Notes under the pieces: generated by a model
Seen by the model: only the letters and a program-made list of their open reading frames with translations
Databases searched by the model: none
What the model was told of the DNA's origin: nothing
Made by a program: the position numbers and the translations under genes
Assembly (NCBI GenBank): GCA_964035545.1
Contig: OZ037770.1
Location: 13,878,642-13,942,641 of the forward strand
Reading direction: 5' to 3'
DNA length: 64,000 bases
Source: Bugula neritina
Taxonomy: Eukaryota; Animalia; Bryozoa
In this document: positions 1-44,838 of the stretch, piece by piece
Layout: each line of letters starts with the position of its first letter
Numbering within the stretch: the stretch's first letter is position 1

Positions 1-160
1 TACTGTAACCTGACATCACCTGCCATATATATCATCAATATACTGTAACCTGGCATCACCTGCCATATCTCATCAGTATACTGTAACCTGACATCACCTT
101 CCATATCTCATCAGTATACTGTAACCTGCTATTGCCTGCCATATGTCATCAGTATAATGT
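1..160. repeat. Tandem repeat, ~38-40 bp unit (tactgtaacctgacatcacctgccatatctcatcagta), about 4 copies, truncated by the window edge
   Basis: Unit restarts at about 1, 41, 79 and 117; probably intronic in the first Roco-caspase gene. Confidence 0.85.
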
Positions 161-494
161 AATTATTATGAGCTAGTAATAACTATATTGATGAGAAATA
201 TATGTTGGTATAATACTTGAGGTAATACAAACTGTTGTTTACAATAATAACCCAATACTTTGGTTATAATCTAATTGCTTACCATTTAAAATAACTGCCA
301 TATTGCATTATCATTTTAATTGGTTCATCAGCATTGAACAGAAAAACTCATAGAAATGCAAAAATATGAAATCATAATAATTATATAATATATATAATAT
401 TATATAAATACATTTATTTATTTAAATATTAAAAAACTCTTTCCCTGAGTATAGATTCAATAAATTTATTAATTATAACCGCTGCTCTCTCTAG

Positions 495-3400
495 TGCTGG
501 GAAGATTCCTAACTTGGAGATGCTCATTCTTTCTGAGAACTGGCTCATGACTAAACAGCTTCTGGAAGTTGTCTGCTCTATCTCTAGCCTGAAGAGAATA
601 TTCCTTCAAAATTGTAGACTGAAAAAGTTGCCAGTCGGGTTTGTAGCCTATCATGCGTACATGTGTGTTTTTATGAACGTGTGTGAAATATTCAATGTTA
701 TTGCTGCATTGTGGGTTATATATTATACCTGTAGGAGTGATTCAGCTGCATAATTTCAAGGTAAGGAGTTGCCTTCTCCTCTTACTATAGCATGAGTATG
801 TTGGAAATTGCATTGGAACTAAAGCCTATGCAGCTAGCTTGTTCTCATTTTCTGTCTTTATTCCCAGCACAGCTTAAGTTTTTATTTAGATTTGTTTGCT
901 TTGCAATGCTTGAATTCAATTTTTATGCAATTTCTGGTTAGTAAATTCAGACATTTGAGTTTTTGGGGTAAAATTATAAACAGCAAAAGAGTGTGTTGCA
1001 CAAATCGATGGAAATTATAGCACATATGCTAAACTCACAGCATTTATGCCACTTTCAAGCTATAGCTCAAAGTTATCATTAATTACTGGTATTGGGTCAT
1101 ACTTGTTGCATCTGATTTTTGCTCAAATCGAAGCTGTGAATCGATTTCAGCGGTTGTTGTAGAAGTGTTGAGTACCTGCTGCTATCTATGACTACTGCTA
1201 GTGTTATTAAAAATGTGTTGATCTCAAAAGGATTTCATAGATTTAATGGATAAATCTGGCTATATGTTTTAAACTTGTCAATCTAAGGGTATTTTTGGTA
1301 CAAGTATGATATTGTGAGTGTGATGGGAGGATTATATTTTTGCTGATTAAGATAGCTATGCATTGGCAGCTTGCAGTCTGAGTGGTAAAAAGAAAACTGT
1401 GACACAAAACATAATGAGTACTCCACTCCAAGTTGAGCTTATTTTGAGCTGTTGTTTAAATTATTCTGTACCTGGCTTTCACTTTTAGAAGGTAGATATA
1501 TTTGTGCTAGAAGTAGCTGCCTTTCTCTGCCTGTTGTTTTATTAGAATCTATCTTCAGTTAGACTATGTATATTATAGTGTTTATGCTGTTAATATAAAT
1601 TTAGTTTTTAATTTTTCAGTTTTATTATGACATCCAAAAAATATGTGAAGCTGAAACTATTTTTGTTATTAGTAATGGTTTGCTACTTATTTATTCTAGT
1701 ACTAGCGGTTGGATAAAATCCAGGTTCTACTGTTCAGTTTCTTAAATTTTCAGGATACTCCAACACTTGACTTTTTGTGAGTTATCTGCCCCACATTCAC
1801 CGCAGTTTTTCTGGTACCAATGATTAGATAAAATCATATAATTTTTTATTTACAGCATCCAGTTTCTTGACAGATTGGAATACTTGGACATTTCTCTCAA
1901 CTCGTTTGTTGATTTTCCACCCTTTATTTGTCGTATTCCCAATTTGAAAGAGTTGAACATGTCCGATTGTATGTTTCTGAAATCATTGAATTCTGGAATA
2001 GCTGGGATGTCTACACTCAGAACTCTCCGGTTGACTGGCAATGGAGCCTTAGAAACCCCTTCAGTTGAGATATGTAGTAGGGGCTTGCATTCCATCAAAC
2101 AATTTTACCAGGATTTGTCTGAAGGAGTTGCCAAAAGTTTTCCATTTGTCACAGTTGCTGTTTTGGGCAGCACAATGGCTGGAAAAACTAGTTTGATCAG
2201 GACTCTACAGAATGCTGACAGAAAGAGAGTTTTGACGAACAGAAGTCCAGATGCTGTGACAGATGAGACGACAAAGGTTTTTAAAATGGAGGAAATAGAA
2301 ATTGGTGATACAGTTCTGCGACTCATTGATATGGGCGGGCAGGAAGTCTATCATATCGCATACCAGCTAACGCTGCGACAAAACTGCATTCCGGTGATAG
2401 TGGTCAACATGCAGCAGTATGATAAAATTGCTAGAGAGTCGACTGGTAGGGAAGCTGTGCGAAGATTGGCTTTTGATTACTTGTCTCATCTCTATCTCGC
2501 TAATCCGACTCTTGGTGCCCCTAAACTCGTGCTCACTCACAAAGACCGGTTTAAGAAAGATGTTTTTGATACTTTGAAAGCAGATTTTCTTCAGCATGCA
2601 CTTGAGTTGTGTGATAATTTGGTTAAGGAAGAGAAGGCACTGGGGAGCCATTTTTGTCAGATTCAGCATTTCAATACTACTAGAGGGGTCTTTTTTGTTG
2701 AAGACATTTATGAGGTAGGAACAGATGATGGTTATTTGGTGTTTGATCAAATAAAGACATCTCTTCTTAAAAGCAGTCAGAGCTTTGTTAAGCTGTTGCC
2801 TCAAGTCTGGGTGGAAGTCAACGAGAAAGTTGCTTCTATGCCATTTGCGTACAACACTGTTGATGAGATGTTGCTCACTTTTCAACAACAAGGCCTTAAA
2901 CTTACCCAAAATCAGCTACGGATAATTCTGATGTACATGAACAGCTGTGGAAAACTCCTGTGGTATCCAGAAGTTGAGCCTCTTCAGACGTTTGTCTTTC
3001 ACAAGATATCTGAGGTCACTAAGCTGCTTTCAGTTTTGTACCATCATGCGAGTGATGCGTGGAAAGTTGAGAGTTTTGTGCCATACTTGGACCACAGAGG
3101 GGTGCCTGTTGAGAAAGAAGAGTTTGAGGCTTCTATGAAGCATTTCAAAAGTACCGGGCTCATCAGTGAGAGCCTACTCTACCGGCTGATTGGCAAGCAG
3201 ACGTCGTTCACTCGCGATTCAGACGTGAAAGTAGCAGTGGCTTTGCTAAAGTCGTTTCGTCTTTTATATGGACCTCTAAAGCAAGATTCCCAAGAAGATG
3301 CTTTTATTGTCCCATACTTTGCCTCTAATTATTTTGAGGCTGCCATTACCTCGGAAGAAAGCCTCTCTCTCCAAGTTGATCTCAAGTTCAATGGCCTATC

Positions 3401-6400
3401 GCTGCCCCAGTATGTTTTCCATCAAATGAGTGTTGGCCTTTTGGAGCTGTTTTCTGATGATGTGGCTTTGCCGCAAGTGCAGCAGAATGGAGCGAGAGTG
3501 TACTGCAATGATTTGGATGTCAAGCTGATTCATAATAAAGTGTCTCGCACGGCCTCGGTTAGCGTAACGTCGTCCGTTGAGCATATTGGCGCCATGTGGG
3601 ACACGCTGATCAGCACGACTAACAACATTCTGAAGCACCTTCTGAAAGCCTGGCCTGTGTGTAGGTCTGTCGTACTATCTTACTGTGCTCATTGTCTGCT
3701 GCTTGGAGTTGCTCATCCTGCCAGAAAGGTCAACCCCAATTGGATATCTCTGAAAGGTGGTCTATCGAAGCTGAATCTTCACAAAGAGCTAAAGATGATC
3801 CTCTGTAATGAAGATAGGATACTCAGTCCGTTTCAATACCCGTGTACGTATCTCAACCTCTCCATTTGACTACTGGATGTTACTCGTTTGGAATTAGAGC
3901 TTCATGTGTATAAGCTGTCCTTGCTATTCTATTGCAATAACTTTTGACGATGTGTGATTCAGGTTTGCCTTTGTCTGAGACGGACACACACAAGTTCTCT
4001 GATGCTGTCAAACAATTGCGAGATTGCAAAAGGCAAGCAGAAAGTCTGTCAGGTTAGAAAATACTTTGCTCTGTTGCATTTCCTGAACATCTTTAGTCAT
4101 CAGCTTTTACTAGAAAACTCGAAACTTACTAAACCTCAAAGCATAAAGTTATATGCATGATGCAAGTGGGAGAATTGTCTTATAGATATGTATGTGTTAT
4201 GTGATGGTAAGTGATGTCTCAATGACATTTCTGTTGTCCTTGTTGTCGTTCATGTTTTAAAACATGTTTTTACAGTGTAGAATACGATAAGTTATTAGAT
4301 TCAGTGAGCCACAGGCCAATACTCAAAAAAAGAACAACTTCCAATATTTAACTACACTTTTTTTTGTTCAAGTAACACTAATTTTACTAACTCCATATTC
4401 AACAAAATCTCATTTTTGATTACTATTAGTTAGCCTGGATTAGAGAAGAAAAAAAGCACATTTCAGCTTCGAACATGATAGGTATTTAAATATATGTCTA
4501 ATTGTAACATTGTTACCTTGCAATTGACTAGCTGGGGTTAAGAGCCAATCAGATGGCATGACTGATGATGTAGCAGCCAATGAGGATGATTTGAGTGATC
4601 TCTCTGATGAGGATGAGAATCTGTATCCAGATGAGGAATTTGGTGAAGATATGAAGTTGATACGTCTGAACCCAACACCAACTACTAGCTCTAGGATAAG
4701 ACAACTCTTCTCAAACACTGACAAGGTATTCCAATCTCATGTAATCTCAAGTACGGAAAAGCAATTCTTATATATTTCAGAATATTTATATTATTTCAAT
4801 GATCTCCTGAACTTTGTTTTTTTCGTAAACTTCAGTTTTAAACATTTTAAGCTCAATGAAGGAGTAACAATAAAATACAAAATTTATGCTTTGTTTATAT
4901 TTCAGAATATTTATATCATTTAGTATAGCTTTCACATAACCTTGTTTCTAAAAGTTAACGGTGATGAATGAAGCTACTGTATGACAAACTTGATTGTTAA
5001 ATACTGTGTTTGTTAGCCATATAGTTTGCTACTCTCTTAGAAAAGTGCAAACTTAAATACTGATTCATTTTTTTCTAAATTTAGAACTATAATCTCTTAT
5101 TTTATTTGATATTTATTATTTACTTCAATTGGATTCTGAACTTTTGCAACTTGTACATAGGCCTACTCATTTATATGCTGTATCGTGCCCCTAGGTATTC
5201 GGTATGACACGGAAAAGAGGAAGAGCTCTTATAATCAACAACAAGAACTTTGATAAGAGACCAGATTTGTGTAGGAAAGGTTCAGATGTTGATGTTGAGA
5301 ATATGTCTGCCATGTTGAAGGAGTTCAAGTTTGACGTCGTGACACACACAGACTTGAAGGCTGAGGTACGTTTGGGTTAGATAGCAAACTAAAATATTCC
5401 TAAATACAAATTATGTAATTATCTCGCGTGGTAAGACCTACACCAGTAAAATGTTACTAATTGTCAACCCTTAGGCTATGCTGCTTGCTGTGAAGGAGGA
5501 AGTGAAATGTGAGGAACACGAAGATCTGGGGTGTCACGTGTTGGTTATCATGACTCATGGAGGTGTGAATAACTACATCTATGGCACTGACCTTAAAAGA
5601 GTCAGTCTTACTGACCTGTATGACTTGTTGACACCCCTGAACTTCCCTGGTATGTCTGGGAAACCCAAAGTGGTGGTACTAGAAGTCTGTAGTGGAGGTA
5701 ACTACAAACTACACTTTAATATTTGAAATCTAAGTATCGTTTTCTTCATAATTGTTAACCACATTTACGGATAGGAAAGTCGGCTACAATATGAATAGTT
5801 TTTCTAATAATTGTTGAACTATGTTTACGAATATGATAATCAGTGGTCAGATGACAGGCAGCCTTTTGAATGTGCTTTTAAGTTAAAGTCTATATGCTTA
5901 ATAGGAAAAGTTAGGACCCATTTATCTTCTTCCAACTTGATTCGTTAATAATTATTCAATTCTGTAAGATCGATATGATTTTACAGTGAGGATAGATGTG
6001 GGTGATAGAGGTATAGACCCAGCACCTGATATTGGACAAGCTCAGAAAGAAGATACTGAAGTAGTATCGCCCCAACCTGCTAAAGTTCCTGGAGTTGTTG
6101 GTTCTGAGGCTATGAATAGACTGAACTATGATGATCTGCTGGTGGTGAAAGCTAGCATGGAGTGTGAGTAGAGAAAATCAGAAATTTTCACCAAAAGCAC
6201 TAGTTAATATCCAACAATGGAAAAAGTCATATTTGTATTTGAAGACACAATTTCATTTTTACATTTGAAGTTTTATACAGCAAATGTGTTTATAAATAAA
6301 TAGAAACTTGCTAAATTTGTTTTAGCGTTCATCTCCAAGATTCACCCTGTGTATGGATCTCTAATGGTTAGAGCTCTTGTATCTTCAATATACAAACATG

Positions 6401-6753
6401 CCTGTCACCATGATCTCTACACCATATTTAAACAGGTTAGTCAAACTGCAGTGCTAACAAAGCAGCAGTACCTATTGTAGTGTAGTATATGCATTGTGGA
6501 TCATCTCTCTAGGTATGTTTGCCATTATCTGGGTACACTTGGTTTTCGTTACCTTGGTAAGCTTACTGTTTTCTAGGTACAGACTAAAGTTAGAAAACTG
6601 TGTGTGGACAAAGATATGAACTGTGGACAGCTGGTTGTAGCCTGGGATACTCTCACTCACATGAGAAAACTCTACCTCTTTCCTGGGTTCAATGGCCACA
6701 TGAGAGAGAATAACTCCTCATTGAGATTGAGTTGTATTGATTGGACCGAATAA
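495..6753 (+). CDS. LRR-ROC-COR-caspase fusion protein, copy 1 (5' partial). Exons 495-638, 1856-3843, 3963-4052, 4532-4725, 5195-5365, 5475-5697, 5987-6163, 6326-6435, 6577-6753
   Basis: All introns are GT-AG and phase-compatible. LRRs (LEYLDISLNSF, LKELNMSDC). ROC motifs GSTMAGKTS, DMGGQ, THKD. COR (LP.VW..V, YMNSCGKLLWY, YCAHCL). Caspase p20 (RGRALIINN, RKGSDVD, IMTHG, GKPKVVVLEVCSG) and p10 (DLLVV, GSLMVRAL, LYLFPG). Stop TAA at 6751-6753. Confidence 0.85.
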
Positions 6754-7529
6754 AAGCATGCCTTTTGGGTTCCCAAGAAAGGATAACTCCTAGTGCAGTT
6801 AAACCCCCTGTATTAATATAATAATTATAATAATTGAAACTAAGCAGCATATACTGATGCAATAACCTGTCCTGTGGTAGTAACAAATGCCACCTATATG
6901 TTTCATATTTTTTTGTATTTTACGTTTACAGAGTTTACACTTTTGTATCACTTATGGCTACACTTGAAGATTTGTATAATATATGTTCCTTTGTAAATTA
7001 ATGCTGAATCTATACTCTATTATTTAATGATCACAGGCCAATTACTCTGAATCTATCTGAATAAATTAATAAATGCAAAATGTAACCTTATATATGATAA
7101 TATTAATTATTAATGTTATATATCTTTTGTGTATTATGTTTCACAGGTTTAAGGCATAGGTGGAGGTTATATCAATTCACATGACCAATAACATAACTTT
7201 TTATTTGTTTTCTTATTTATAAACTCATTTCATAAATAAATTTCAGTCAAATCATAGCTGCTTATTATCCTTTGGTCTGAGAAAATAGTGTATTAAAAAT
7301 AATTGGACTTGTACCTTTTAAAATTTGTGGCTGCTTCCTTGAAACATGTACTGTGTGACAAAAAGATGTTGGGAAATAAGTTCAAGCTTTTAGTTTTACT
7401 AAACTAAGGTAAATTATTTATTACATCATAAAAATAGTTTTTCCAAATATTTACATATAATGATATGCACAGTTTAATTATCTTATTATGGCTTTGTACT
7501 TGATTAATTAACTTGTAAACAAATCTCAG

Positions 7530-7757
7530 AACGGCCGCGACTGTTGCGACGATTGATTGGTTGCGTACACTGAAGCCTGCATGACTAATGCGTTATATCA
7601 TCCAATAAGAGCAAAGTTTGCCTATTTCCTCCATTCTACGAAATAAGCTTTTGTACAGGTACAACGCTTTGCGTACAGCATGAGAGCTGAAATATTTTAG
7701 CCGTATTGCCTCCACCACTACTCTAGGCTCGTGACCTTATTAATGATAACTAGTAAG
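7530..7757 (+). promoter_or_regulatory. Candidate promoter and non-coding first exon of Roco-caspase copy 2
   Basis: Locally CpG-rich patch with ATTGG (~7556) and CCAAT (~7603) boxes, followed by a GTAAGT donor near 7752; a tttttag acceptor at 8281 precedes the first coding exon. Confidence 0.35.
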
Positions 7758-8372
7758 TATAATATATAATATAGTTATATAAATTATAATCTGTTAGTTT
7801 AGTGAGTTAACGTGTACCAAAACCCTTTTAGCACAACCCTGTATTTAGCTTTTCAAGGCTGTGGGTAAATTTTATTAAAAATAGACATAATTTAAGTTTG
7901 TTGATAGACTGATGATAATGGGATTATGATCAAAGAGTGTCACTTGTTGGGTTGGATGAGCAACCATTTATCATCAAAACAAATATAGACTATAGTAATC
8001 ACTATAGAGTATCAGTTTTGTTGTAAGCAAGTTAATGAACTTGTGGTATGTCTATCATGTTGTTACCCACACAATCACATTATCAGTGCAAATCTCATTA
8101 GACTACTGGCAACTAATAACTAGTTACTAGCTACTAGTTACTAGCTACTAGTTACTAACTATCATTAACTAGCTACTAGTAAATACCTACTAGCTACTAC
8201 TTACAGTTACTGGTTAATAGTAGATAGTTAGTATAAGGTAATAGGTTTCTAACAAATACTGCAGATAATTTGCCTTTTTAGATGACTAAAATGTTGAAGA
8301 TAACAAGCCAGAAGAATATAGACATGTAAACATAAGGTTACAATAAGAAAAATATGATCTCAAGTCATAAAC

Positions 8373-11300
8373 ATGCATAAAGTAGCCATGTCCACTGCTA
8401 ATGCTATTGAGACAGGTAGGTGTTTTGTCACAAGTTTTCAATCATCTAGTAAAGTCATAAACTTTACAGTGTTGTCTTTTGTTCTATACTAGTAAATCAT
8501 GGGTTTGCTTTTTCCTGGCTGAGAAATTGCTTAGAATGAGAGTGTAATCCTTGTGTGCATTAATTATCCAAGTCCTCCTATTTTCAAACATGTTTATATT
8601 AAGTTAAACTGCTAAGGTGTGGATTTTGTATGCCTATTGAAAAATCTGTGAATATTGTGAGGAAATTTTTATTTTTATTTTCTTCTGCAGACAATAACTA
8701 TAAGCATAATATTTTATGATTTTCTCCCAAACATTAAAGAGAAGCCATGAAAACTTAGCTGCCATAAAGAATGAAAAAAGTAAACAATATGTTTAGGGCC
8801 TTCATTAACATAAAATTACATAACATTTAAAAACTCCTTTACAGATCAAATCTACCTTGTGGATGAATATGAAGCTACACATCTCATGTACGATAAAAAT
8901 ATTATCTGTAGGCCATAATTACAACCAGGGATGTAGTAGCAAAAAGATTCTAGGCTATACTCTCAGGCCGGGTGTCCAGGGGGCCGCCCAGGCCCCCGGC
9001 GGGGTTTGGGGCAGTGCCCCGGCCACCGAAGTCCTCAGAGCGCTTCTGATGCAAATTTATGCAATTTAAAGCCATTGTAAATTCTAATTTTTCTAAAAAA
9101 AATCGATGTTGAAAGGTGCACTTCACTATTATTTTCATACCATACCATAATATACTCTAATATACACAGGGCAACCTTTTAGCTGAGGCTGCATTATTAG
9201 TGTATATAAAAATTTGGCACCACCCCCAACTAAAACCTCACCCAATTGTGCTAGAATCAAAATTTAAAAACCATGTTGTAGATCTTCCTGTTCCTCAAAG
9301 GAATTTTTTTGGAGTTTTCAATATTGTTTTTTTGCAAAGTCATAGACAAAAAACTACCCATTTTTGGCCAAATTTACCCGAAAAGTTTATTTTTCAGTCC
9401 CTGCCAAATATCTCAGCAGAAAGCATGTATTCGAATAGAACAAACACTGTCGGAATCCTGAGAAATTTTTGCAGAGCACATATCTTTTTGTCTTTTCAAT
9501 AGCTTTCATAGATTTTCTACAAATTAGTGATTTATACACTGAAAATGCGATATTTTTTCTTAAGCATTCACCAATGCGCAGCACTTCGAGCTTTAGTGAA
9601 CAAGAAGAGATGAGAAGATACTGATGCATACGTTACCAAGTACAGGCCTGCTAGTTGACAGGCTAGTGAATAGCTTGATGCGTACTTCGTTTATGGGGCA
9701 GCCATGATGGAATGTTGATAGATGATGCAGCCCTTATTGGTCATAGTGTAATCTCAGGCTAAACAAGCACAAGTAGGCAACACCCATGCCACCCACATAG
9801 CATTAACATAGCAAGAACTTAAATTAGATTGTAAGCGAAATTTACGATGTTCTCAGTGAGAATGCCTTAACTATTCTGTGCACTAATCATCAGTAACACA
9901 TACAAAAATATGCCCATACGAGCCTAGAACAGTCTATTTTCTTCTAGACCATACGGCGTATGGGATTGTATGGGTACCACTACATTCCTGATTGCAACTA
10001 TAGTCAAATTAAAGTAATACCACTAAATATACATACATATCTATGTACAACTATATATACATATATATATACATGTATTTATATACGTACATCTACATAT
10101 CTCTACAACATGCAGGTAAATATGCAGTGTGGTTCAACCGCTCTACCAATGTTCCTGAGGAAGAATGGATGGAGAATAAAACAAAATACTACTCCATAGA
10201 AGAGCTGAGTGCTTTCAGTCCCACAGTCACTCATCTGATAATCAAATATTCCATTCCTCAGAATATTCACACTCTGTTTCCTTACCTCACACATCTGAGA
10301 GTGAGGCATTTGAAGAGAGATGCTGACTTTAGTTGGTGAGTTATAATAGTAACTAATAACTGCTTACTAATTCCTAGTAACTAGTTATTATTAAAAGTTA
10401 CTTGTGACTATTTACTAAAAGTAACTATTTACTAGTAGCTATTGACTAATTACTAGTAACTGTTTGTTGTTGCAGTATATTTCTGCTGAGAAATCTAAAA
10501 GTGCTGATTATGTCAAGAAATGACCTGTCTGATAGATTGTCTAAGAATATTTTCGCACCTTTACAATCGTTGGAGGAATTGTATATCCGAGACTGCAAAC
10601 TGACTGTTATACCAAAGAGGTAAGTACATACCCAAATCTGTTTAAAGTATCCACTCCTGTGAAAGCCCCTGATTACAAGAGTTTTTAATGGGCTAAAAAA
10701 AGTGTCTCTTACCATGCTGGCAACATCAAAAAATATCCAACTTTCTACCATAAAGAGCTTCAAATGTTGTGAGCATAAATTTCCTTATAGAAATAGTATA
10801 TATTATAATATAGTTTATAGAAATAAGATTATGTTAATACGTTAGGTATATTTTATAGAAATAGTATATATTATAATATACTTTATAGAAATAAAGTATA
10901 TAGTGGTATTATAATATATTTTACAGAAATAATATATAGTAGTATTATAATTTATTCTATAAAAATAAAACATATTATAAAAATATATTTTATAAAAAGA
11001 CTATATATTATAATATAATTTACTTTACTGTTTGTTGCAGTGTGTTTCAGCTAAAGAATCTGGAAGTGCTAAATGTATCGTGGAATGAACTGTCGGATAT
11101 ATCAAGTGCTACGTTCACATCCTTACAATCATTGAAAGAGTTGTACATACGATGGTGTAACCTAACTTCTCTCCCTAAAAGGTAGGTACATACATAGCAT
11201 AATCTAACTTACGAATGAAATTTACGCTAAATATTATATACTCTGCAACATTTTTGATACTCAATAATAGAAAATGTAAAATTCAGCCAATCAGCTGCAA

Positions 11301-14300
11301 GCAGCACTCAAATATCTCGCCATTTTAACTTATATATAAAATTCTGCAAGCTCAAGTGCAAAATTCATTCTTCTAAAGATATAGTTGTGCAACTTTTGCT
11401 GCCTGCATATCTTAAATTTATATGTTTCTGAGTTAATTTTTTAAAATTCAAGTGTTGGTAAAATGCAAATAAAGTTCTATGTCGGCAATAATATCTTGGT
11501 ACAGTTTTGCTGCCTAGCACCAGCTGTGGCATAACCATTAGCTTTATTGATATAACCTGAATGCTTATATAAATATAGTGAGTGAGTTTTACGTGGTATA
11601 TTATGAGTGTCTAATGGAAACTCTTGACACTAATCTTTGGATGTTTGAAGATTGATAAAGATTTCTGTGAACTCAACTGTAGCAATGATGTAGAAATGAT
11701 GTAAAAAGCGTATTATGTGTCATTTGTAGTATAACACAGCTGAAACACCTACAAGTACTAAACATGTCAAGGAATGAGTTATCTAGTAACCTAACAGATG
11801 CTACATTCACATCTTTGCAGTCATTGACAGAACTGCATATGCGCTGGTGTAATCTTACTTCTCTACCCAAGAGGTGTGTATAGAAATCAATAAAATGAAC
11901 GAGGTCAAGGCACGATAACTCTTAACTCATCATTCCTTGTTTTAAAAATTAACATAATACGTTAATGCAACGTTTGAACCAAAACATTTAATTTTAATAG
12001 AATTTTCATTTGCATAATCAAAATGTCCCACCACACTATCTATTTTTGAATATTTATTTTAAAATCTTTAGCATACATTATATGGTTTTTATAAGCTAAG
12101 CACCTGAAAGGTAACATTAGTAGTTCAGCTAAAAATGTTTTGGCAACACATGAAGTATAGCTGGCTTTTAATATTCAGTAGATTTCATTTTTATTGTGGT
12201 ATCTCATCTTTACAACTGTGGATTACATAATAGATAGTATTTTATTCATTTATTTATTTATAATTTATTCATTTATAATTTATTTATTAATAATTTATTT
12301 ATTTATAATTTATTTATATATGTTGTCTTGTTTTTAGTTTGTTTCATTTGAGGCTTCTTGAAGTGCTAAATGTGTCGGGAAATAAGCTGTCCAACAGTTT
12401 ACCGGATGACTCATTTAAATTCTTGCGGTCATTGAAAATTCTGAACATCAGTGACTGTAAATTGACTTCTCTACCAAAGAGGTACACCAAATAATATATT
12501 ACAATAATATAGAGTGTTATACCATTGGCTGGAGAATATTAATCAACTTTTTACAGATTAGCAATATGCATAATATAAAACTATATCAATTACATTTTAT
12601 TGTATAGACTTTTCATACTTGGTTTGTTTGAAGTAATAAAGAAGTTGTGTGCCCTGTGTTATAGTCTGTTTTTGCTGACGAATCTTGAAGTACTGAGTAT
12701 GTCTGAGAATGTAGGACTGTCTAACAGTCTACCAGATGATATGTTCTCATCGTTGCAGTCACTGAGAGAGTTGGACATTGGCAGCTGTTTCCTTAGTGCT
12801 CTACCAAACAGGTGTGGCTTATTACAGAGTTAAACTGAAATAATACTTGTCTATTTTATTATAAGTCAACTAAAATCTAGTTAATTGTTGTTTGTGTGTG
12901 CGCACGTGAGTGAGTGAGTGAGTGAGTGTGTGAGTGAGTGTGTGTGTGAGCGAGTGTGCGCGTGTGTGCGCGAGTGTGTGCGTGTGTGTGCGTGAGTGTG
13001 TGTGTGTGAGTGAGTGTGTGAGTGTGCGCACACGTATATGTGTGAATGGTGTGGTGTGATATCACAATTTAATTTGAAGTAGTTGCTGTTTTATACCAAT
13101 TAAATTCCAAGGATTTGCTTAAAATTTATTAGCTTATTTTTATGTTTATTTAATAGCATTCCAAGCTTGCAAAAACTGCAGACTCTGAAACTCCAAAGAA
13201 ATAACTTCACCAGCCTATCCTCTTCCGTGTATCAATTGGGTGACCTGCGCCAACTGGACATCTCCAACAATGGCTTCTTCACAACTTTAAGTTCTGAAAT
13301 TCTACAGCTTGGTAAATTACAGAAAATAAATGTGGAAAATTGTTATGCTCTCACATCTCCTCCACTTGAGGTATGCAAGAGAGGAGTTGATACTGTAAGA
13401 CAATATTACACAGACTTGGCTAAAGGTGCTGGTAGAAGTTTGCCATTTGCGACAATAGCCCTGTTAGGCAATACAATGGCCGGGAAGACCAGTCTAATCA
13501 AGACCCTACAGAATAAGGACAGGAAGAGAGTTCTGACGGACAGAAGTCCAGACGCTGTGACAGATGAGACGACAAAAGTCTTCAACGTTGAAGAAGTTGA
13601 AACCGATAACACAATACTCCGACTCATTGATATGGGAGGACAGGAAGTGTATCACATAGCCTATCAGCTGACCTTGAAACAGAATTGTGTACCGGTGATT
13701 GTGGTCAACTTGCAGCAGTATAACACAATCTCAAATGAAACAACTTGTAGAGAAGCTGTTCGCAGGTTAGCTTTTGACTTCATGTCTCACCTCTATCTCG
13801 CAAATCCATCTCTCGAGGCTCCTAAACTTGTTTTTACGCACAAAGACAAGTTTTCAGTTTCCATGTTCAAAGAGCTACAATCTAGTTTTCTTGAGGTTTC
13901 TGATCATATTTGTGCTGAGATTGTTCGAGAGGCAAACGCAGTTGGTAGTGAAATCTGTCAAATTCAAATTTTCAGAGAAGTAACTAAACGTGTCTTTGCT
14001 GATGATGACATATTTGTAGTTGGAATAGATGACGAGTATCAAGTATTTGATTCAATTAAAAAATCCCTTCTTCGGAGTTGTCAGCTTTTTGTCAAACCTC
14101 TACCAAAAGTTTGGGAAGAAGTAAATGAGAAAGTTTTGGCTAAGCAGGCCGCCTATCAGTCCTTTTGGTCCACACTGGTTTTACTACAACAACAAGGCCT
14201 TCAGGTTGAGCCCACTCAGTTAGATATAATTCTCACTTACATGCACGATTGCGGTAAAATCTTGTGGTACAAAAACATTGATGCACTCAAACCTTTCATT

Positions 14301-17300
14301 TTTCACAGGATATCAGAGGTCACCAAGCTTGTGTCCGTTTTGTACCATCACGATTCTTATGTTTGGCAAAATAGATGCAGTCAATTCTTGCCTTGTCCTT
14401 CTAAAAACAAGATGCTTGTTGAAAGACAAGAGTTTGAGGAGCTGGTTTCAGATTTTAATGATACAGGCGTTTTGGTGCACACTCTTCTTGTTTATTTAAT
14501 TGAGCAAGAAACGTCATTCAAAAGTGTCCAAGATATCGATATTGCTATTTGCTTGCTCAAGAGCTTCCGTTTGTTACACGGTCCATTTCAAAGAGATTCT
14601 GACAGCTCGTGTTTTATTGTGCCGTTGTTTGCCAAGGAATATTTCAATATATCTTTCTCTTCACCGAAAAAGCTTTGTCTTCAAACCAGTGTCCAGTTCA
14701 ATGGCCTAACCCTGCCTCAATATGTTTACCATCAAATGAGTGTTGGCCTGTTGGAGTTGTTTCCTGACGTAACGGCGGTAATCAAAGTGAAAAGAAATGG
14801 TGCTAATGCATATCAGGATGGAATCTACACTCAGCTAATTCATGATTACAAGTCAAGCAAGGTTAACGTTTATGTTTCATCCGAAACGGTCGATATTAGT
14901 AGCATGTGGGCACGGCTGGTCAGCACCACCAACAACATGCTGAAACATGTTCTAGAAACTTGGACGGCGAGTAGACCGGTTACTTCTGTTTACTGTGCGC
15001 ATTGCCTGCTGCTGGGAGACCCTCATCCAAGAAAGATAACAAACCCTCAATGGTGTATCAATTCGCTGAACAAGTCCGCACCTCCAGTTTCCTTGTACAA
15101 TGGGCTTACGTTATGCAAGGAGGAAGAAATTCCAAGTGCTCTTCTCTATCCGTGTATGTCTATTTTAGTCCTTCTTAAAATCTTTGCTTATGCTGCAGCA
15201 TTTTGCGTGGAAGTACTCCGAAAATAGTAATAAAAGATGAAAAAATATCAAATATTTAAATGGAATAATAATTTGTTGTATTATATGTTCTCGTAAACAG
15301 ACATCCACCATAACTGTCTTTGATTTTCTGTAGTATTCAAAAGTTCTGATTTGCTATAGGTAACGCTGTGCTAGAAGATGAAGCTTGTACGAGTCTTGAA
15401 AAAATGGTTGATCGATTCATTGCTAGAAGAAATGAAAAGAAGGCAACTCTTGCAGGTAAGTTTTTTGTGAGATTATCTTTCAGCGTGTCTTTGCATCAGG
15501 TTTACAATTTTGTTATGGAATTTCCCCACACAACATATTATTATTTAATCTTTTTTTAACTTACCTTTAAAACACAGTGTCTTAATATAATTCTATTCCA
15601 TACACTTTAGTGCACTGATTATTATTATCAAGTCATATATGCTGTAATAGTTATTTATGTGAAACAACATGTATATAAGTAATGTAACATAATACATGCC
15701 ATAACTTGCAATCAAACTATTGCTACAGCTAGCAGTCTTAGCCAATCAAATGAGAGCACAAGGGATCAAGCAGCCAATGAAGATGATTTGAGTGATCTCT
15801 CTGATGAGGATGAGAATCTGTATCCAGATGAGGAATTTGGTGAAGAGATGAAGTTGATACGTCTGAACCCAACACCAACTACTAGCTCTAGGATAAGACA
15901 ACTCTTCTCAAACACTGACAAGGTATTCCAATCTCATTTAATTTCAAGTACAGAAAAGCAATTCTTATATATTTCAGAATATTTATATCTTTTATTTATA
16001 TAATTTAGTGTAGCTCTAACATAACCTGGTTTCTAGAGGTAAGAATGAAGCTAGTTCTATATTATGAGCCTGGTTTTAAATGCTGTTTTTGTTAACAATA
16101 TAGTTGGCTACTCTCTTAGGAAAGTGTAAGCTTAAATACTGGTCCACATTTGTTGTTTTTTGTTCAAAATTCAGAGCTATAATCTTTCATTGGATTTGAT
16201 ATTTATTATTTACTTCACTTAGATTCTGAGTTCTTGTAACTTGCACATAGGCCTACTCATTTATATGCTGTATGGTGCCCCTAGGTGTTCAGTATGACAA
16301 GGAAAAGAGGAAGAGCTCTTATAATAAACAACAAGAACTTTGATAAGAGACCAGATCTGTGTAGGAAAGGTTCAGATGTTGATGTTGAGAATATGTCTGC
16401 CATGTTGAAGGAGTTCAAGTTTGACGTTGTGACGCACACAGACCTGAAGGCTGAGGTACGTTTGGGTTAGATAGCAAACTAAAATATTCCTAAATACAAA
16501 TTATGTTATTATCTCGCGTGGTAAGACCTACACCAGTAGAATGGTACTAATGGTCAACCCTTAGGCTATGCTGCTTGCTGTGAAGGAGGAAGTGAAATGT
16601 GAGGAACATGAAGATCTGGGGTGTCATGTGTTGGTTATCATGACTCATGGAGGTGTGAATAACTACATCTACGGCACTGACCTTAAAAGAGTCAGTCTTA
16701 CTGACCTGTACGACTTGTTGACACCCCTGAACTTTCCTGGTATGTCTGGGAAACCCAAAGTGGTGGTACTAGAAGTCTGTAGTGGAGGTAACTACAAACT
16801 ACACTCTTTAATATTTGAAACTCTAACCATTGTCAACCACCTTTACGAATAGGAAAATCAGCAACAACATGAATAATTTTTATGCTAAATCTATACGTTC
16901 ATTAAAAAGGTTGGAATTCCTTTAACTTTTTCCAACTTGACTCGTTAATTATTATTTAATTCTGTAAGATCGATATGATTTTTACAGTGAGGATAGATGT
17001 GGGCGATAGAGGTATAGACCCAGCATCTGATATTGGACAAGCTCAGAAAGAAGATACTGAAATAGTATCGCCCCAACCTGCTAAAGTTCCTGGAGTAGTT
17101 GGTTTTGAGGCTATGAATAGACTGAACTATGATGATCTGCTGGTAGTGAAAGCTAGCATGGAGTGTGAGTAGAAAAAATCGATGCCTGCAGCCATTAGCA
17201 AACGTTTATTCATCTTTTCACAGAAAGTACTGGTTAATATCCAACAATGGAAAAAGTCATATTTGTATTTAAAGACACAATTTCATTTTTAAATTTGAAG

Positions 17301-17753
17301 TTTTATACAGCAAATGTGTTTATAAATAAATAAAAACTTGCTATGTTTGTTTTAGCCTTCATCTCCAAGATTCACCCTGTGTATGGATCTCTAATGGTTA
17401 GAGCTCTTGTATCTTCAATATACAAACATGCTGGTCACCATGATCTCTACACCATATTCAAACAGGTTAGTCAAGCTACAGTGCTAACAAAGCATCAGTA
17501 CTCATTGCAATATAATAGTATATGCATTGTGGATAATTTCTGTAGGTATGCTTGCTGTTTTCTGGGTACACTTGGTCTTCGTTATCTTGGTAAGCTTATT
17601 ATTTTCTAGGTACAGACTAAAGTTAGAAAACTGTGTGTAGACAAAGATATGAACTGTGGGCAGCTGGTCGTAGCCTGGGATACTCTCACTCACATGAGAA
17701 AACTCTACCTCTTTCCTGGGTTCAATGGCAACATGAGAGAGAATAACTCTTAA
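8373..17753 (+). CDS. LRR-ROC-COR-caspase fusion protein, copy 2 (~1364 aa). Exons 8373-8415, 10116-10335, 10476-10619, 11041-11181, 11730-11873, 12338-12481, 12665-12811, 13157-15153, 15360-15455, 15729-15922, 16285-16455, 16565-16787, 16988-17164, 17356-17465, 17610-17753
   Basis: The exons sum to 4095 nt with no in-frame stop. Five 141-147 bp double-LRR exons. ROC motifs GNTMAGKTS, DMGGQ, THKD; COR with YCAHCL; caspase His (16646-16648) and Cys (16778-16780). The first exon (MHKVAMSTANAIET) is the least certain part. Confidence 0.85.
8926..9990. mobile_element. Non-autonomous hAT-like DNA transposon in intron 1 of copy 2
   Basis: Imperfect TIRs cagggatgtagt / actacattcctg and an 8-bp TSD attacaac / attgcaac. 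The interior (~9170-9880) resembles the internal part of the elements at 44839 and 54326. Confidence 0.65.
11284..11550. repeat. Dispersed repeat, diverged copy also at ~35290-35570
   Basis: Shared blocks such as tatataaaattctgcaag, gttgtgcaactttt, tggtaca.ttttgc and cataac..ttagctttatt. Confidence 0.65.
12893..13058. repeat. Compound (TG)n/(GAGT)n microsatellite
   Basis: Seen directly in the sequence. Confidence 0.9.
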
Positions 17754-18738
17754 TTGAAATTAACTTGTATTCGGCTCGGTAGTGTGTGGCTTATATTAGA
17801 ATTACTCACTACTGCTTACCCCGCACTTTATTATATTCTAATAGAAAACTTTTTGTAAAACTAAAAGGTAATTTATACTAACTTTCCTGTTTTGTGCATT
17901 TCTGTTCAAGGTACAGAGCATTTTGATAGCTATATATTTTCCCTGTTATTATATTTAGTTATATCTTATACTATAATTGTATTAAACACATATAATACAG
18001 TTTTCAACGTAGAAGCACATTACTTCAGAATGAATAAGTTTAGAAAATTATCTTTTCAACATTTAAAGTGCTTTTGTCTACAACTTGCAGTCTTTAAGCT
18101 GTTTTATTATCTCTGATATATAATATATTTGGTGATTGCAGTGAAATTGATAAACTTGTACATTACATGTTGAATTTTTTGAGTTCATTCTCAACTGGTA
18201 ACAATAAACATAAATATATTATTCTTATTACTCCATCGGTAATTGCTTTTATAATTCACATGTAATAAATATTACTTTATTGTTAATACAGTACTGCTTC
18301 TATAAGACTTTGGTGCATAGTATCTGTTTTTTCCAAAAAAGTATCTTTAACTGACATGTTGAGCATTTTTGAAGTTCTTTAAGTTCAATGAATTTACAAG
18401 CTTCCATATTTTATGTATAGCTGACAAACTAAAGCGTACGGACTATAGTGTTTCGTAAGCTGCAAAAGGAGCATTATTTTATGGGAAATAAAGTTAAACA
18501 ACAACAACAGTAAGCTTTTCTTAGCGCGTCCGCGCCAGACCTAAACTAGATAGTTTCACATACAAAAGAAGGAAATGTGTGTAGTTGTCTGTTCATTATT
18601 CTGTGACTAGCGGCGAGAAATCTTTTGGTATTAGTTTTTCTGCCGCAAGTTTTGTCGATTGTTAATTAGCATGCAGCCTATGGACTACAGCTTTATGCAC
18701 ATGTCGGCATAAACTGATGAAAGCTGCAAAAGTCATCA

Positions 18739-29303: not shown

Positions 29304-32300
29304 GTATATATATATATGTATATATATACATATATAGATTCATATTTGGGTTCATAGGTGGTCAATTTGGTATGTATAACATCCATAGGGGGCTCTGTGC
29401 CCATAGGGGGCTGCTCATAGGGGGCACCATGTTTGAGTGTTTTAAATTACTCAGAACAGTCTGTTATGGTATATAGACACTATTTTAAAAATAGGCTCAC
29501 AGAAGGACAATTTGATATTTTCCAATATCAGAGGGGGCTCTGTATATATATACAAAAAGCCCCCTATGGTATTATACAATATCAAATTAGGGAGTTGTCT
29601 CCCCAAAAACTAATGTAAAGGTTTTTCACTGTTGGAAACACTTAATTACATTGATAATAATATCATTTCAGTTGCTATAATTGTGCCAGGGCTTAAGGTA
29701 GAACTTGTATAGAAATCTGGTCTGCATCTCCGTTAAAAAAATATATTTGAGTTGTTGTGAGCTTATATATAGTATATCTGCCCCCTATGAGCCTATATAT
29801 TCTATATCTGCCCCCTATGAACCTATATATTCTATATCTGCCCCCTATGAACTTATATATATTATATCTGCCCCCTATGAGCCTATATATTCTATATCTG
29901 CCCCCTATGAGCCTATATATTCTATATCTGCCCCCTATGAACTTGTATATATTTTATGTGCCATCTTTGAGCTCATATATACTATATATGTGCCGCTATG
30001 AGCCTAGATATGTTATATGTGCCCCTTATGAGCTCATATATGCTGCATGTATGCGATCCCCATAAGCCTGTGTATACTATATCTGCCCCCTATGAGCCTA
30101 TATATTCTATATCTGCCCCTATGAGCCTATATATTCCATATCTGCCCCCTATGAACTTATATATATTATATCTGCCCCCTATGAGCCTATATATTTTATA
30201 TCTGCCCCTATGAGCTTATATATATTATATCTGCCCCCTATGAACTTATATATATAATATCTGCCCCCTTTGAGCTTATATATTCTATATCTGCCCCCTA
30301 TGAACTTATATATATAATATCTGCCCCCTATGAGCTTATATATTCTATATATGCCCCCTATGAGCCTATATATTCTATATCTGCCCCCTATGAATTTATA
30401 TATATAATATCTGCCCCCTATGAGCCTATATATTATATATTTGCCCCCTATGAGCTTATATATTCTATATCTGCCCCCTATGAACTTATATATTCTATAT
30501 CTGCCCCCTATGAGCTTATATATTCTATATCTGCCCCCCATGAACTTATATATATAATATCTGCCCCCTATGAGCTTATATATTCTATATATGCCCCCTA
30601 TGAGCCTATATATTCTATATCTGCCCCCTATGAATTTATATATATAATATCTGCCCCCTATGAGCCTATATATTATATATTTGCCCCCTATGAGCTTATA
30701 TATTCTATATCTGCCCCCTATGAACTTATATATTCTATATCTGCCCCCTATGAGCCTATATATTTATTATCTGCCCCCTATGAGCTTATATTATATTATA
30801 TATCTGCCCCTATGAGCTTATATTATATTCTATATCTGCCCCCTATGAATTTATATATTCTATATCTGCCCCCTATGAGCTTATATATATTATATCTGCC
30901 CCCTATGAGCCTATATATTCTATATCTGCCCCCTATGAGCTTATATATATTATATCTGCCCCCTATGAGCTTATATATATAATATCTGCCCCCTTTGAGC
31001 TTATATATTCTATATCTGCCCCCTATGAACTTATATATATAATATCTGCCCCCTATGAGCTTATATATTCTATATATGCCCCCTATGAGCCTATATATTC
31101 TATATCTGCCCCCTATGAATTTATATATTTAATATCTGCCCCCTATGAGCCTATATATTCTATATCTGCCCCCTATGAGCTTATATATTCTATATCTGCC
31201 CCCTATGAATTTATATATATAATATCTGCCCCCTATGAGCCTATATATTCTATATATGCCCCCTATGAGCCTATATATTCTATATATGCCCCCTATGAGC
31301 TTATATTATATTCTATATCTGCCCCCTATGAGCCTATATATTATATATCTGCCCCTATGAGCTTATATTATATTCTATATCTGCCCCCTATAAACTTGTA
31401 TATATTTTATTTGCCATCTTTGAGCTCATATATACTATATATGTGCCGCTATGAGCCTAGATATGTTATATGTGCCCCTTATGAACTTATATATTCTATA
31501 TCTGCCCCCTATGAGCCTATATATTCTATATCTGCCCCCTATGAGCTTATATATATTATATCTGCCCCCTATGAGCCTATATATTCTATATCTGCCCCCT
31601 ATGAGCTTATATATATTATATCTGCCCCCTATGAACTTATATATATAATATCTGCCCCCTTTGAGCTTATATATTCTATATCTGCCCCCTATGAACTTAT
31701 ATATATAATATCTGCCCCCTATGAGCTTATATATTCTATATATGCCCCCTATGAGCCTATATATTCTATATCTGCCCCCTATGAACTTATATATTCTATA
31801 TCTGCCTCCTATGAGCCGATATATTTATTATCTGCCCCCTATGAGCTTATATTATGTTATATATCTGCCCCTATGAGCTTATATTATATTCTATATCTGC
31901 CCCCTATGAATTTATATATTCTATATCTGCCCCCTATGAGCTTATATATTCTATATCTGCCCCCTATGAGCTTATATATTCTATATCTGCCCCCTATGAG
32001 CCTATATATTCTATATCTGCCCCCTATGAGCTTATATATATTATATCTGCCCCCTATGAGCCTATATATTCTATATCTGCCCCCTATGAGCTTATATATA
32101 TTATATCTGCCCCCTATGAACTTATATATATAATATCTGCCCCCTTTGAGCTTATATATTCTATATCTGCCCCCTATGAACTTATATATATAATATCTGC
32201 CCCCTATGAGCTTATATATTCTATATATGCCCCCTATGAGCCTATATATTCTATATCTGCCCCCTATGAATTTATATATATAATATCTGCCCCCTATGAG

Positions 32301-43011: not shown

Positions 43012-44838
43012 ATAACACCCAGTGATTGAACTTGCAAACATGTGACACTCATTCCTATTGGCTGGATTCAGTCTCAAGCTTACCTATTGGCTTACGGTGA
43101 CAAACAATAGCAACTAGTGCTACACTCTACCATATGCATATAATACAGGCTTATCTCCAGCTCTTGTTGACCTTCACCTTAACCTTGTTGACCACAGCTC
43201 ATAATATTATACACGGTTAGTTCTGTATGCAGTAATCTGGCTCGACATCTAGTTTCCTGGGTATTTTCCGATTGGCTGTTTGGCTCGAGTGTTATTGTTG
43301 ATGTCTGAGATTGTCATTGTGCACGCATGCGCTCCAAGTACACAATATAATAATAATATATAATAATATTATAATGATCAACATAATTATTATGTTCTTT
43401 CACCATGAGCTTCAACTCACACATTGAATCACACCAACATTTAACATTTTGGTTCAAGAATTTGGGTAAATATTTATCTACTTCTAGTAGCAAAGTTAAA
43501 TTATTGGTAAATCAAATCACAGCTGCCTTAAAACTATATTAATCATAATATTAGTGTATAGCATTAATATTACTAATAGTATATACATTATGAATAGTTT
43601 TCAATAATATGTATCAATATGTTTTTGTTAGTAGAGTGTTGCCATTCCTTTCTTATATTAAAAGTGACAATTTCTGTTTATTTTTATTTTTACTGTTATA
43701 AAGTTCTGTCAAATTTAATTACTGTTCATTCGCTCTACTTGGTATTTAAATATACCTCTGAATAAAATTTGTAATTTTATCAAAGTGTTTAGCTGCTTGC
43801 CTTGTATGAAATAAAAGTTTTAAAAATGGTGGATGATTAGTAGCTTTTGTTACAAATAACGTAAATGCTGAAAAATATAAAAAATACATCTGCGTATGTT
43901 AAAAAGTACACTGATAAATTGTTCGAGTGTGAAAGAATAAATATGAAAGGGTTTCTGTTATGTGCAGATCTGTGACCATCTGCTGCACTTTTTCTTTAAC
44001 ACGGTCATCTATATAGGAAGGTAGCCTGCATTGTCCTAAAAATAAATAATCCTAATTATTACAATATTTATATACATATATATTCAAAATATTTGACTGT
44101 GAATAACAAAATAAGGTAAATGGTAAATTGTTCTCAGGAACTTCATTGCATTGAGTCTTGGAGGATATTACCGCTGTGCACTAGTGTACTCAATTTTTAC
44201 ACAGCCTCAGTTAAATATTTGCAAGCAGTACTAGGTCTCATGGTGATTTACTTTGCCAACAGGATGTCCAGCATGTTCTTGCAAACACAGCATGACAGGC
44301 TCGTACTGTAATCACCAAACACCATTGAAGTTGGTTCTGGCCATCACCAACTGATGCCCTTTTTATCTTTTCAGCAATCATTTTTGGGAACTGTTTAACT
44401 TTATAGCTGTTCCCTGTGTTGTAATACAAAATAAAATATCAAAAGGATTAGTCACTAAGGCATCAAGATAGGCAGCATTAACATGGATAATATGTGTACT
44501 TTAGAGTCTTTAACATCTGTAGAGTAGTGTAAAGTTTTTACAGTCCTGTTTAATTTTGAGGGTCTTTTTGGAAATTCTACCATTTGTGCTAGAAACCTTT
44601 AAGCAGTAATTGTGTAAGTTGAATTTTGTTTGACTATGAAGAAGGTCTATATAGTATGTATACTTTTTGGTAATTAAGGAGAAAATGCTGCGAGAGAATC
44701 ATAGACAGTTTAATTTGTAGCTATCTTGTATATATATCCTGGACTTTTGAGCTGGGTGGTCACCATCTTTCTAATATGAAAATGTAAACAAAATATGAAA
44801 ATAATTATTTTAAATGAATAAAACAAAATATATTATAA

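What the first reader, a model, noticed from the sequence alone, without database searches (positions are those of the whole stretch)
495..17753. Tandem LRR-ROC-COR-caspase genes: a candidate one-polypeptide sensor/GTPase-switch/protease immune receptor
Seen: in two adjacent genes the LRR, ROC-COR and caspase exons join in one frame through matching linker exons (3963-4052 and 4532-4725; 15360-15455 and 15729-15922), with conserved intron phases. Known: the well-studied animal Roco proteins (LRRK1/2, DAPK1, MFHAS1) carry kinase or death domains or no effector; COR mediates nucleotide-regulated dimerisation; initiator caspases are activated by induced dimerisation, normally via CARD/DED adaptors. 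The COR end (YCAHCL..G..HP...LC.....L.YP) resembles MFHAS1. Inference: ligand binding by the LRRs could drive ROC-COR dimerisation and directly activate the attached caspase, an adaptor-free analogue of the NLR inflammasome/apoptosome. I do not know this architecture from characterised animal proteins, but I cannot search to confirm novelty.
Basis: partly seen in the sequence, partly recalled or inferred. Interest (0 to 1): 0.93.

Follow-up and report, generated by a model that had tools for sequence, protein, structure and literature searches.

The report
Bryozoan Roco GTPase fused to caspase
Two neighbouring genes of a moss animal (bryozoan) each join a leucine-rich-repeat surface, an LRRK2-like GTPase switch and a caspase protease in one spliced protein; this design was glimpsed before in bacteria, amphioxus and an annelid but never tested, and here two very different sensor halves share an almost identical caspase with an altered substrate pocket.

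Summary
Observation confirmed. Both genes splice GT-AG into one stop-free frame: LRR, Roc, COR, acidic linker, caspase. For gene 2, RNA contigs show the COR-to-linker joint and five of the six later joints. An allele shows purifying selection (dN/dS 0.15). The host is very probably Bugula neritina. The architecture is not new in principle: bacterial LRR-Roc-COR-caspase (Kaur 2021), amphioxus LRR-caspases (Zhang 2008) and an Owenia ROC-caspase (Horkan 2024) are published, and I found full fusions in Watersipora, Branchiostoma, Owenia and Lingula. None is functionally tested, and I found no paper on the bryozoan family. The scan has noted this family before on other DNA of this genome (44 notes). 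Specific to this locus: (1) the two ROC-COR halves are deeply diverged (dS above 1.7) while the caspase modules are 95-98% identical, which points to recent module exchange; (2) the caspases keep His/Cys and Arg179 but lack the Gln283 and Arg341 equivalents, so specificity or activity is probably altered. Best mechanism: an adaptor-free immune or cell-death receptor gated by the Roc-COR nucleotide cycle, probably with the GDP/empty-state dimer as the active state. This is inferred, not shown.

The parts
495..638 (+). Gene 1 LRR exon (two repeats, phase 2-2); more LRR exons probably lie upstream, off-window
   Evidence: LRR_4 E 0.002
1856..3843 (+). Gene 1 large exon: last LRRs, Roc GTPase, COR ending in the CxHC...C...YP motif
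   Evidence: Roc 28.3 bits, above cutoff 27; COR-A E 1.6e-4
3963..4052 (+). Gene 1 linker exon 1 (predicted helix after COR)
   Evidence: helix in homolog model
4532..4725 (+). Gene 1 linker exon 2: acidic Asp/Glu-rich tether and caspase N-terminal extension; identity to gene 2 jumps about 35-40 nt into this exon
5195..6753 (+). Gene 1 caspase, five exons (5195-5365, 5475-5697, 5987-6163, 6326-6435, 6577-6753); His in MTHG, Cys in EVCSG
10116..10335 (+). Gene 2 N-terminal coding exon (cap before the LRRs); 5' limit and start codon uncertain
   Evidence: weak match (E 0.002) to the N-terminus of a Bugula fusion protein
10476..12811 (+). Gene 2 five symmetric phase 2-2 LRR exons of 141-147 nt, two repeats each (10476-10619, 11041-11181, 11730-11873, 12338-12481, 12665-12811)
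13157..15153 (+). Gene 2 large exon: last LRRs, Roc (G1 GNTMAGKTS, G3 DMGG, G4 THKD), COR
   Evidence: AlphaFold pLDDT 86, best Foldseek hits LRRK1 8e05 (E 1e-23) and C. tepidum Roco 6hlu
15360..15455 (+). Gene 2 linker exon 1
   Evidence: spliced to COR exon in RNA contigs; kept in frame in allele L023
15729..15922 (+). Gene 2 linker exon 2 (acidic tether)
16285..17753 (+). Gene 2 caspase, five exons (16285-16455, 16565-16787, 16988-17164, 17356-17465, 17610-17753); Arg179 kept, His/Cys dyad kept, Gln283 to Glu, Arg341 to Ile

Best explanation
These are two members of a large, diversifying bryozoan family of single-chain intracellular receptors. Shown: one spliced ORF per gene, an intact Roc GTPase under purifying selection, a COR domain, a disordered acidic tether, and a caspase fold with the His/Cys dyad. 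Inferred: the caspase descends from a CARD-type initiator caspase, with LRR-Roc-COR standing in place of the CARD, so COR-mediated self-association supplies the proximity that an apoptosome or inflammasome normally supplies. By analogy with C. tepidum Roco and MASL1, the GTP-loaded form is probably the resting monomer. An LRR-sensed cue (a microbial molecule, an effector or non-self) that promotes hydrolysis or nucleotide loss would give the dimer and fire the caspase, leading to cell death or immune signalling. Family members swap or homogenise caspase modules by ectopic recombination, so different sensor halves feed one output. In this sub-clade the S1 pocket is remodelled, so the substrate is probably not a standard Asp-P1 site, or activity is reduced.
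For: One frame and GT-AG introns. Spliced RNA joints. Allele dN/dS 0.15 for ROC-COR, and caspase dN/dS 0.08 between the paralogs. G motifs nearly invariant. Fold matches to LRRK1/CtRoco and to caspase-9/CED-3. Disordered tether, residues 664-715 of the homolog model. Bryozoan fused caspases form one clade with a Watersipora CARD-caspase (SH-aLRT 99-100) that shares the same acidic pre-caspase motif. Many paralogs; all 4 long paralog contigs examined carry caspase exons behind the COR exon. Symmetric two-repeat LRR exons, as in the shuffling brown-algal ROCOs (PMC11378527). Module exchange: gene 1 vs gene 2, and L016 vs L018 are 81% identical over ROC-COR yet carry caspases of different clades. 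Nucleotide polarity from PMC5714945 and PMC3995007. The bacterial equivalent is predicted to be a counter-invader system (PMC8195603).
Against: There are no functional data. No single listed RNA contig spans LRR to caspase, and one joint is only inferred. The LRR part of the large exon shows no positive selection between alleles (dN/dS 0.19, 67 codons); the cassette LRR exons could not be tested. The S1 changes may mean weak or no proteolysis in these two copies. Dimer polarity is borrowed from a bacterial protein about 16% identical. Some Watersipora models end before a caspase, so COR-terminated forms may exist.
Confidence: 0.55

Rival explanations
1. The fusion is real, but in this pair the caspase is a weak or dead pseudo-protease (c-FLIP-like). 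It acts as a scaffold, heterodimer partner or decoy for the family members with canonical pockets, or for pathogen caspase inhibitors.
For: Of 23 caspases aligned, only these two lack both the Gln283 and Arg341 equivalents; Trp340 is Lys. Related paralogs vary at the same sites (ETCSG with Arg kept, ETCSG with Ile, HACSG). Paralogous RNA contigs also show both Arg and Ile forms.
Against: His, Cys and Arg179 are kept, and the module is under strong purifying selection (dN 0.009, dS 0.113). Pseudo-caspases usually lose the Cys or His (established knowledge).
Confidence: 0.2
2. The proteins are nucleotide or stress gauges, or developmental death switches (polypide regression, brown-body formation, metamorphosis), and the LRRs bind host partners rather than microbial ligands.
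For: Characterised Roco LRRs (LRRK1/2) are regulatory rather than proven pattern sensors (own knowledge). Loss of GTP binding makes MASL1 toxic (PMC3995007). The LRRs next to Roc are under purifying selection.
Against: Dozens of diverged paralogs, tandem arrays, cassette LRR exons and module exchange are hallmarks of conflict genes; a housekeeping switch would not need them.
Confidence: 0.15
3. Activation runs the other way, or by release: GTP binding or LRR unlatching frees an auto-inhibited caspase held in the COR dimer, or the acidic tether is cut and the caspase dimerises on its own.
For: The CtRoco GTP state is the monomeric, active state (PMC5714945; PMC11052575 title). The tether is rich in Asp and disordered.
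Against: Initiator caspases generally need imposed proximity (established knowledge). A 50-residue disordered tether is unlikely to transmit inhibition, and no COR-caspase packing was evident (pTM 0.66, shallow alignment).
Confidence: 0.08
4. The Roco gene and the caspase are separate transcription units that merely can be joined on paper.
For: No full-length read. A possible poly(A) hexamer lies at 15229 and in-frame Met codons lie in the linker exons.
Against: The COR-to-linker joint is in RNA. The linker frames are kept in an allele and in both paralogs. More than ten RefSeq/GenBank bryozoan proteins are annotated as fused.
Confidence: 0.02

Closest known systems
Bacterial LRR-AP-GTPase(Roc)-COR conflict systems with variable C-terminal effectors, caspase among them (Kaur et al. 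2021, PMC8195603)
   Same: Same domain order and the same proposed logic: variable LRRs, GTPase switch, fused effector, several paralogs per genome.
   Different: Prokaryotic and only predicted. The effector here is an animal-type caspase closest to CED-3/caspase-9/-8/-2, in intron-rich genes; the ROC-COR forms its own long-branch bryozoan clade.
Amphioxus 'LRRs-caspase' hybrid genes (Zhang et al. 2008, PMC2575513); BRAFLDRAFT_67388
   Same: Proposed as a direct shortcut from pathogen recognition to apoptosis. I found that B. floridae 67388 is LRR-Roc-COR-A-COR-B-caspase.
   Different: The paper's text does not mention Roc or COR, and I could not confirm that 67388 is one of its models (figures are images). 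It has the canonical QACRG and S1 Arg, and a different ROC-COR clade.
Owenia fusiformis ROC-prodomain caspase (Horkan et al. 2024, PMC11463336) and Lingula XP_013407220.1
   Same: Roc-COR fused in front of a caspase through an acidic linker in another lophotrochozoan.
   Different: No LRRs (the Owenia protein has a Bcl-2 domain instead). It was treated as a single species-specific oddity. Its ROC-COR does not group with the bryozoan one (AU p 5e-5, sparse sampling).
MFHAS1/MASL1 and C. tepidum Roco (LRR-Roc-COR)
   Same: LRR-Roc-COR core and fold; RefSeq labels the homologs MFHAS1-like.
   Different: No fused effector, and single-copy rather than expanded.
Brown-algal LRR-ROCO candidate immune receptors (PMC11378527)
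   Same: Lineage-specific expansion with exon-cassette LRRs; a few members carry a C-terminal peptidase.
   Different: That peptidase is listed as IPR009003 (trypsin-like, from own knowledge), not a caspase; one repeat per exon there, two here.
NLR inflammasome / Apaf-1 apoptosome with CARD caspases
   Same: Repeat sensor, NTP switch and proximity-activated caspase.
   Different: Those use a STAND ATPase, death-fold adaptors and ring oligomers; here there is a GTPase, a presumed dimer and a single chain.

Membership tests
Roco proteins | Ras-like Roc domain with G1-G4 motifs | tested here: met
   Pfam Roc above cutoff in both genes; G1 GKT/S, G2 Thr, G3 DxGG and G4 THxD nearly invariant in 50 homologs
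Roco proteins | COR domain directly after Roc | tested here: met
   COR-A weak by Pfam (E 2e-4 to 9e-4), COR-B weak in a homolog; Foldseek aligns 650-720 columns to LRRK1 and CtRoco, probability 1.0
Roco proteins | GTP binding/hydrolysis and nucleotide-dependent dimer cycle | not testable with these tools
   needs biochemistry
Caspases (C14A) | Caspase fold with p20 and p10 halves and an intersubunit linker | tested here: met
   Peptidase_C14 on two exons; PDB hits CED-3 and caspase-8; homolog model matches caspase-9, CED-3 and caspase-7
Caspases (C14A) | His-Cys catalytic dyad | tested here: met
   MTHG and EVCSG align to the CED-3 His and Cys
Caspases (C14A) | QACxG motif and S1 Arg179/Gln283/Arg341 for Asp-P1 specificity | tested here: not met
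   Arg179 kept; Gln to Glu and Arg to Ile in both genes. All Watersipora, Branchiostoma, Owenia and Lingula fusions aligned keep all three. So these are caspase homologs, not shown to be Asp-specific.
Classical initiator caspases | CARD or DED prodomain | tested here: not met
   No death-fold hit on the exons scanned or on full-length fused homologs; the two linker exons were not scanned, but are only 30-65 aa
NLR / STAND receptors | NACHT or NB-ARC ATPase | tested here: not met
   The P-loop domain is a Ras-like GTPase
MFHAS1 orthologs | Orthology to vertebrate MFHAS1 in a ROC-COR tree | tested here: inconclusive
   The bryozoan ROC-CORs form their own clade; no vertebrate sequence was available to include
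Bacterial AP-GTPase conflict systems | LRR-AP-GTPase-COR with a variable C-terminal effector | tested here: met
   Architecture met. It is an analogue in an intron-containing animal gene; no sign of recent transfer (bacterial Rocos 23-27% over short stretches).
Bryozoan LRR-Roc-COR-caspase family (undescribed in papers found) | ROC-COR and caspase both inside the bryozoan clades, joined by the acidic linker | tested here: met

The most novel reading that the evidence does not exclude
Roc-COR GTPases are a second, recurrently evolved switch for animal innate-immune cell death, parallel to the STAND ATPases of NLRs and Apaf-1. Bryozoans run a repertoire of dozens of such one-chain receptors, re-pair sensor halves and caspase modules by recombination, and have evolved a caspase sub-clade with non-aspartate specificity.
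Probability: 0.3. Interest if true: 0.85.

Novelty: new variant of a known kind. Interest (0 to 1): 0.63.

Why it matters
How the Roc-COR nucleotide cycle controls an attached effector is a long-standing open question for LRRK2 and DAPK1. A natural Roco whose output is a dimer-activated protease gives a direct readout of which nucleotide state is 'on'. For comparative immunology, it suggests that GTPase-gated single-chain death receptors stand beside NLRs in several invertebrate phyla and are greatly expanded in a colonial animal. The near-identical caspase on two old, diverged sensor halves and the remodelled S1 pocket give concrete cases for studying effector swapping and change of caspase specificity. 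The score is tempered because the domain order is already published as a prediction, sits unnamed in RefSeq/GenBank, and nothing functional is shown.

Tried and rejected
(1) 'Bryozoan-only, unprecedented architecture': rejected after finding Branchiostoma, Owenia and Lingula fusions and three papers. (2) Independent origins from the caspase tree: the first AU tests rejected one clade only because an unfused sister of the Lingula caspase was left out; with it included p = 0.096, so the caspase tree does not decide. Only the sparse ROC-COR tree rejects a single origin (p 5e-5). The careful tree search did not finish; quick trees were used. (3) Positive selection on LRRs: not seen in the 67 codons that could be compared. 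(4) A third Roco-caspase gene or extra LRR exons elsewhere in the window: none. (5) The metagenome scan gave mostly short contigs, one with a caspase exon behind ROC-COR. (6) Paper searches for a bryozoan Roco or caspase family found nothing; subscription papers are not covered, and Huang 2008 (Genome Research) was not held. The joined protein was built only inside scripts and was not sent to any search or fold tool, so the window's own caspase active site was not modelled; a Watersipora homolog stood in.
Full report
OBSERVATION. I rebuilt both genes from the raw sequence. Gene 1 (495-6753, nine exons, 5' end not found) and gene 2 (about 10116-17753, fourteen exons) each translate without a stop, and all 21 introns are GT-AG. 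From the ROC-COR exon onward the intron phases match between the two genes. The LRR exons are symmetric phase 2-2 cassettes of 141-147 nt carrying two repeats each. Exon-wise Pfam gives LRR, Roc above the curated cutoff, weak COR-A and Peptidase_C14. An AlphaFold model of the large exon (pLDDT 86) matches LRRK1 and C. tepidum LRR-Roc-COR over 650-720 columns.

IS IT ONE MESSAGE? Contigs of four public runs were laid on 13100-17800. Runs X2 and X7 have empty intron bins while X14 covers them, so X2 and X7 behave as RNA. The decisive joint from COR to linker 1 (15151/15362, four letters between) is listed for X1; the four letters give the same Pro-Cys-Asn as the genome by two synonymous changes. 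The joints 15922/16285, 16455/16565, 16787/16988, 17164/17356 and 17465/17610 are listed. The joint 15455/15729 is not among the rows shown; it is consistent with the unplaced 41 letters of X1 contig 6 but is an inference. A syntenic allele (L023, 91% over 2.9 kb with introns) keeps both linker exons in frame and gives dN/dS 0.15 over the large exon. More than ten bryozoan RefSeq/GenBank proteins are annotated with the same fusion.

ORGANISM AND FAMILY. The closest named homologs are from the bryozoans Watersipora subatra and Bugula neritina. The allele and about 25 paralogous ROC-COR exons at 43-63% come from JGI records; the five I fetched are from samples whose record names carry AY690838, which I recall as the B. 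neritina mitochondrial accession (own knowledge). B. neritina is therefore the likely host. All four long paralog contigs examined have caspase exons behind the COR exon. Earlier scan notes count 50-109 such genes in this genome; I did not verify those counts.

ANATOMY. The G1-G4 GTPase motifs are nearly invariant in 50 homologs, as are a CxHC motif and a later Cys at the COR end. A model of a full-length Watersipora homolog shows a helix after COR (linker exon 1), about 50 disordered acidic residues, the caspase large subunit, a disordered intersubunit linker and the small subunit; the caspase part matches caspase-9, CED-3 and caspase-7. In caspase trees the bryozoan fused caspases, including this pair, group with a Watersipora CARD-caspase that shares the acidic pre-caspase motif (SH-aLRT 99-100). 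This suggests that LRR-Roc-COR took the place of a CARD; the direction of the swap is not proven, since the CARD form could be derived from a fusion.

TWO LOCUS-SPECIFIC RESULTS. First, the two genes are mosaics. The ROC and COR regions are close to saturation at silent sites (dS 1.7-2.6; 51% amino-acid identity over the exon), yet the caspase module has dS 0.11 and dN 0.009, and one intron is 96% identical. The switch lies about 35-40 nt into linker exon 2. A second case points the same way: L016 and L018 share 81% over ROC-COR but carry caspases of different clades. Second, the S1 pocket is remodelled. Both genes keep His, Cys and the Arg179 equivalent, but read Glu for Gln283 and Ile for Arg341; none of the other 21 caspases aligned shows these changes (one is truncated before Arg341). 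Close paralogs vary at the same positions. An earlier first-stage note on this window had flagged the S1 change; I confirmed it by alignment.

DISTRIBUTION AND PRIOR ART. A profile search of 1.8 billion representatives found Roc-COR-caspase fusions outside bryozoans: Branchiostoma floridae (LRR-Roc-COR-caspase, 1609 aa), Owenia fusiformis (Bcl-2-Roc-COR-caspase) and Lingula anatina. Kaur et al. 2021 (PMC8195603) list caspase among at least 24 effectors fused behind bacterial LRR-AP-GTPase-COR. Zhang et al. 2008 (PMC2575513) report amphioxus LRRs-caspase hybrids as shortcuts from recognition to apoptosis, without naming Roc or COR. Horkan et al. 2024 (PMC11463336) note one Owenia caspase with a ROC pro-domain. 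Aplysia TIR proteins with ROC-COR are reported as a possible immune GTPase cascade (PMC9334734). I found no paper on the bryozoan family and no functional test of any Roco-caspase. A sparse ROC-COR tree rejects a single origin of the fused Rocos (AU p 5e-5), while the caspase tree does not (p 0.096). Repeated origin is favoured but not established.

MECHANISM. The most likely reading is an adaptor-free immune or cell-death receptor in which COR self-association activates a tethered initiator-type caspase. I therefore favour a GTP-bound resting monomer and a GDP/empty active dimer, triggered through the LRRs. Shown: gene structure, splicing, domains, selection, mosaicism and S1 changes. Inferred: ligand sensing, dimer cycle, proteolysis and immune role. 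The rivals are a decoy or pseudo-protease role for this sub-clade (0.2), a developmental or metabolic death switch (0.15), release-type activation (0.08) and separate genes (0.02).

VERDICT. A real feature and a new variant of a known kind. The domain order is published as a prediction and is present, misnamed, in databases, and the scan has met this family many times on other DNA of this genome. It remains uncharacterised, is unusually expanded here, and offers a direct assay of Roc-COR switching. The caspase-module exchange and the remodelled pocket are the additions from this locus. Interest 0.63.

Noticed in passing
window 4570-6738 vs 15767-17771: The caspase modules of the two genes are 95-98% identical in exons and 96% in one intron, whereas the ROC-COR exons are 62% and linker exon 1 is 51% identical. 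The switch lies about 35-40 nt into linker exon 2, just before the acidic motif. This suggests recent gene conversion or module grafting.
   Followed up: yes
L016 2160-6760 vs L018 9761-14690: Sister ROC-COR exons (81% nt) are followed by caspases of different clades (HACSG type vs EVCSG type); an assembly chimera is not excluded.
   Followed up: partly
P0157 (Owenia CAH1786849.1): Architecture Bcl-2, Roc, COR, caspase. The passages I read in the paper that mentions the Owenia ROC caspase do not note a Bcl-2 domain.
   Followed up: partly
P0200 (Branchiostoma belcheri KAI8482183.1): COR-B, caspase and GT4-conflict glycosyltransferase in one predicted protein; may be a fused gene model.
   Followed up: no
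P0126 (Watersipora XP_067936783.1): The LRR C-cap is joined directly to the acidic linker and caspase with no ROC-COR, which may be a deletion derivative or a mis-prediction.
   Followed up: partly
window 14994-15116 (COR end): An invariant CxHC motif and a later invariant Cys in all 50 homologs; possible zinc site, not tested.
   Followed up: partly
P0219, P0211, P0100 (Bugula neritina GenBank): Fusion proteins of this family carry the name CASP8 in UniRef/GenBank, and Pfam misses their Roc domain, which helps explain why the family is overlooked.
   Followed up: partly
   Followed up: no
window 29758-33128: A 30-bp satellite of about 111 copies. Its long ORFs and TLR3-TMD Pfam hits are artefacts of the repeat.
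   Followed up: yes
window about 49770-63430 (-): Tandemly duplicated flavin-containing monooxygenase (FMO-like) genes, with a 1.7-kb non-coding duplicate at 44834-46550 / 54321-56052.
   Followed up: partly
window 1-162: 38-bp tandem repeat of 4.2 copies upstream of the first LRR exon of gene 1.
   Followed up: no
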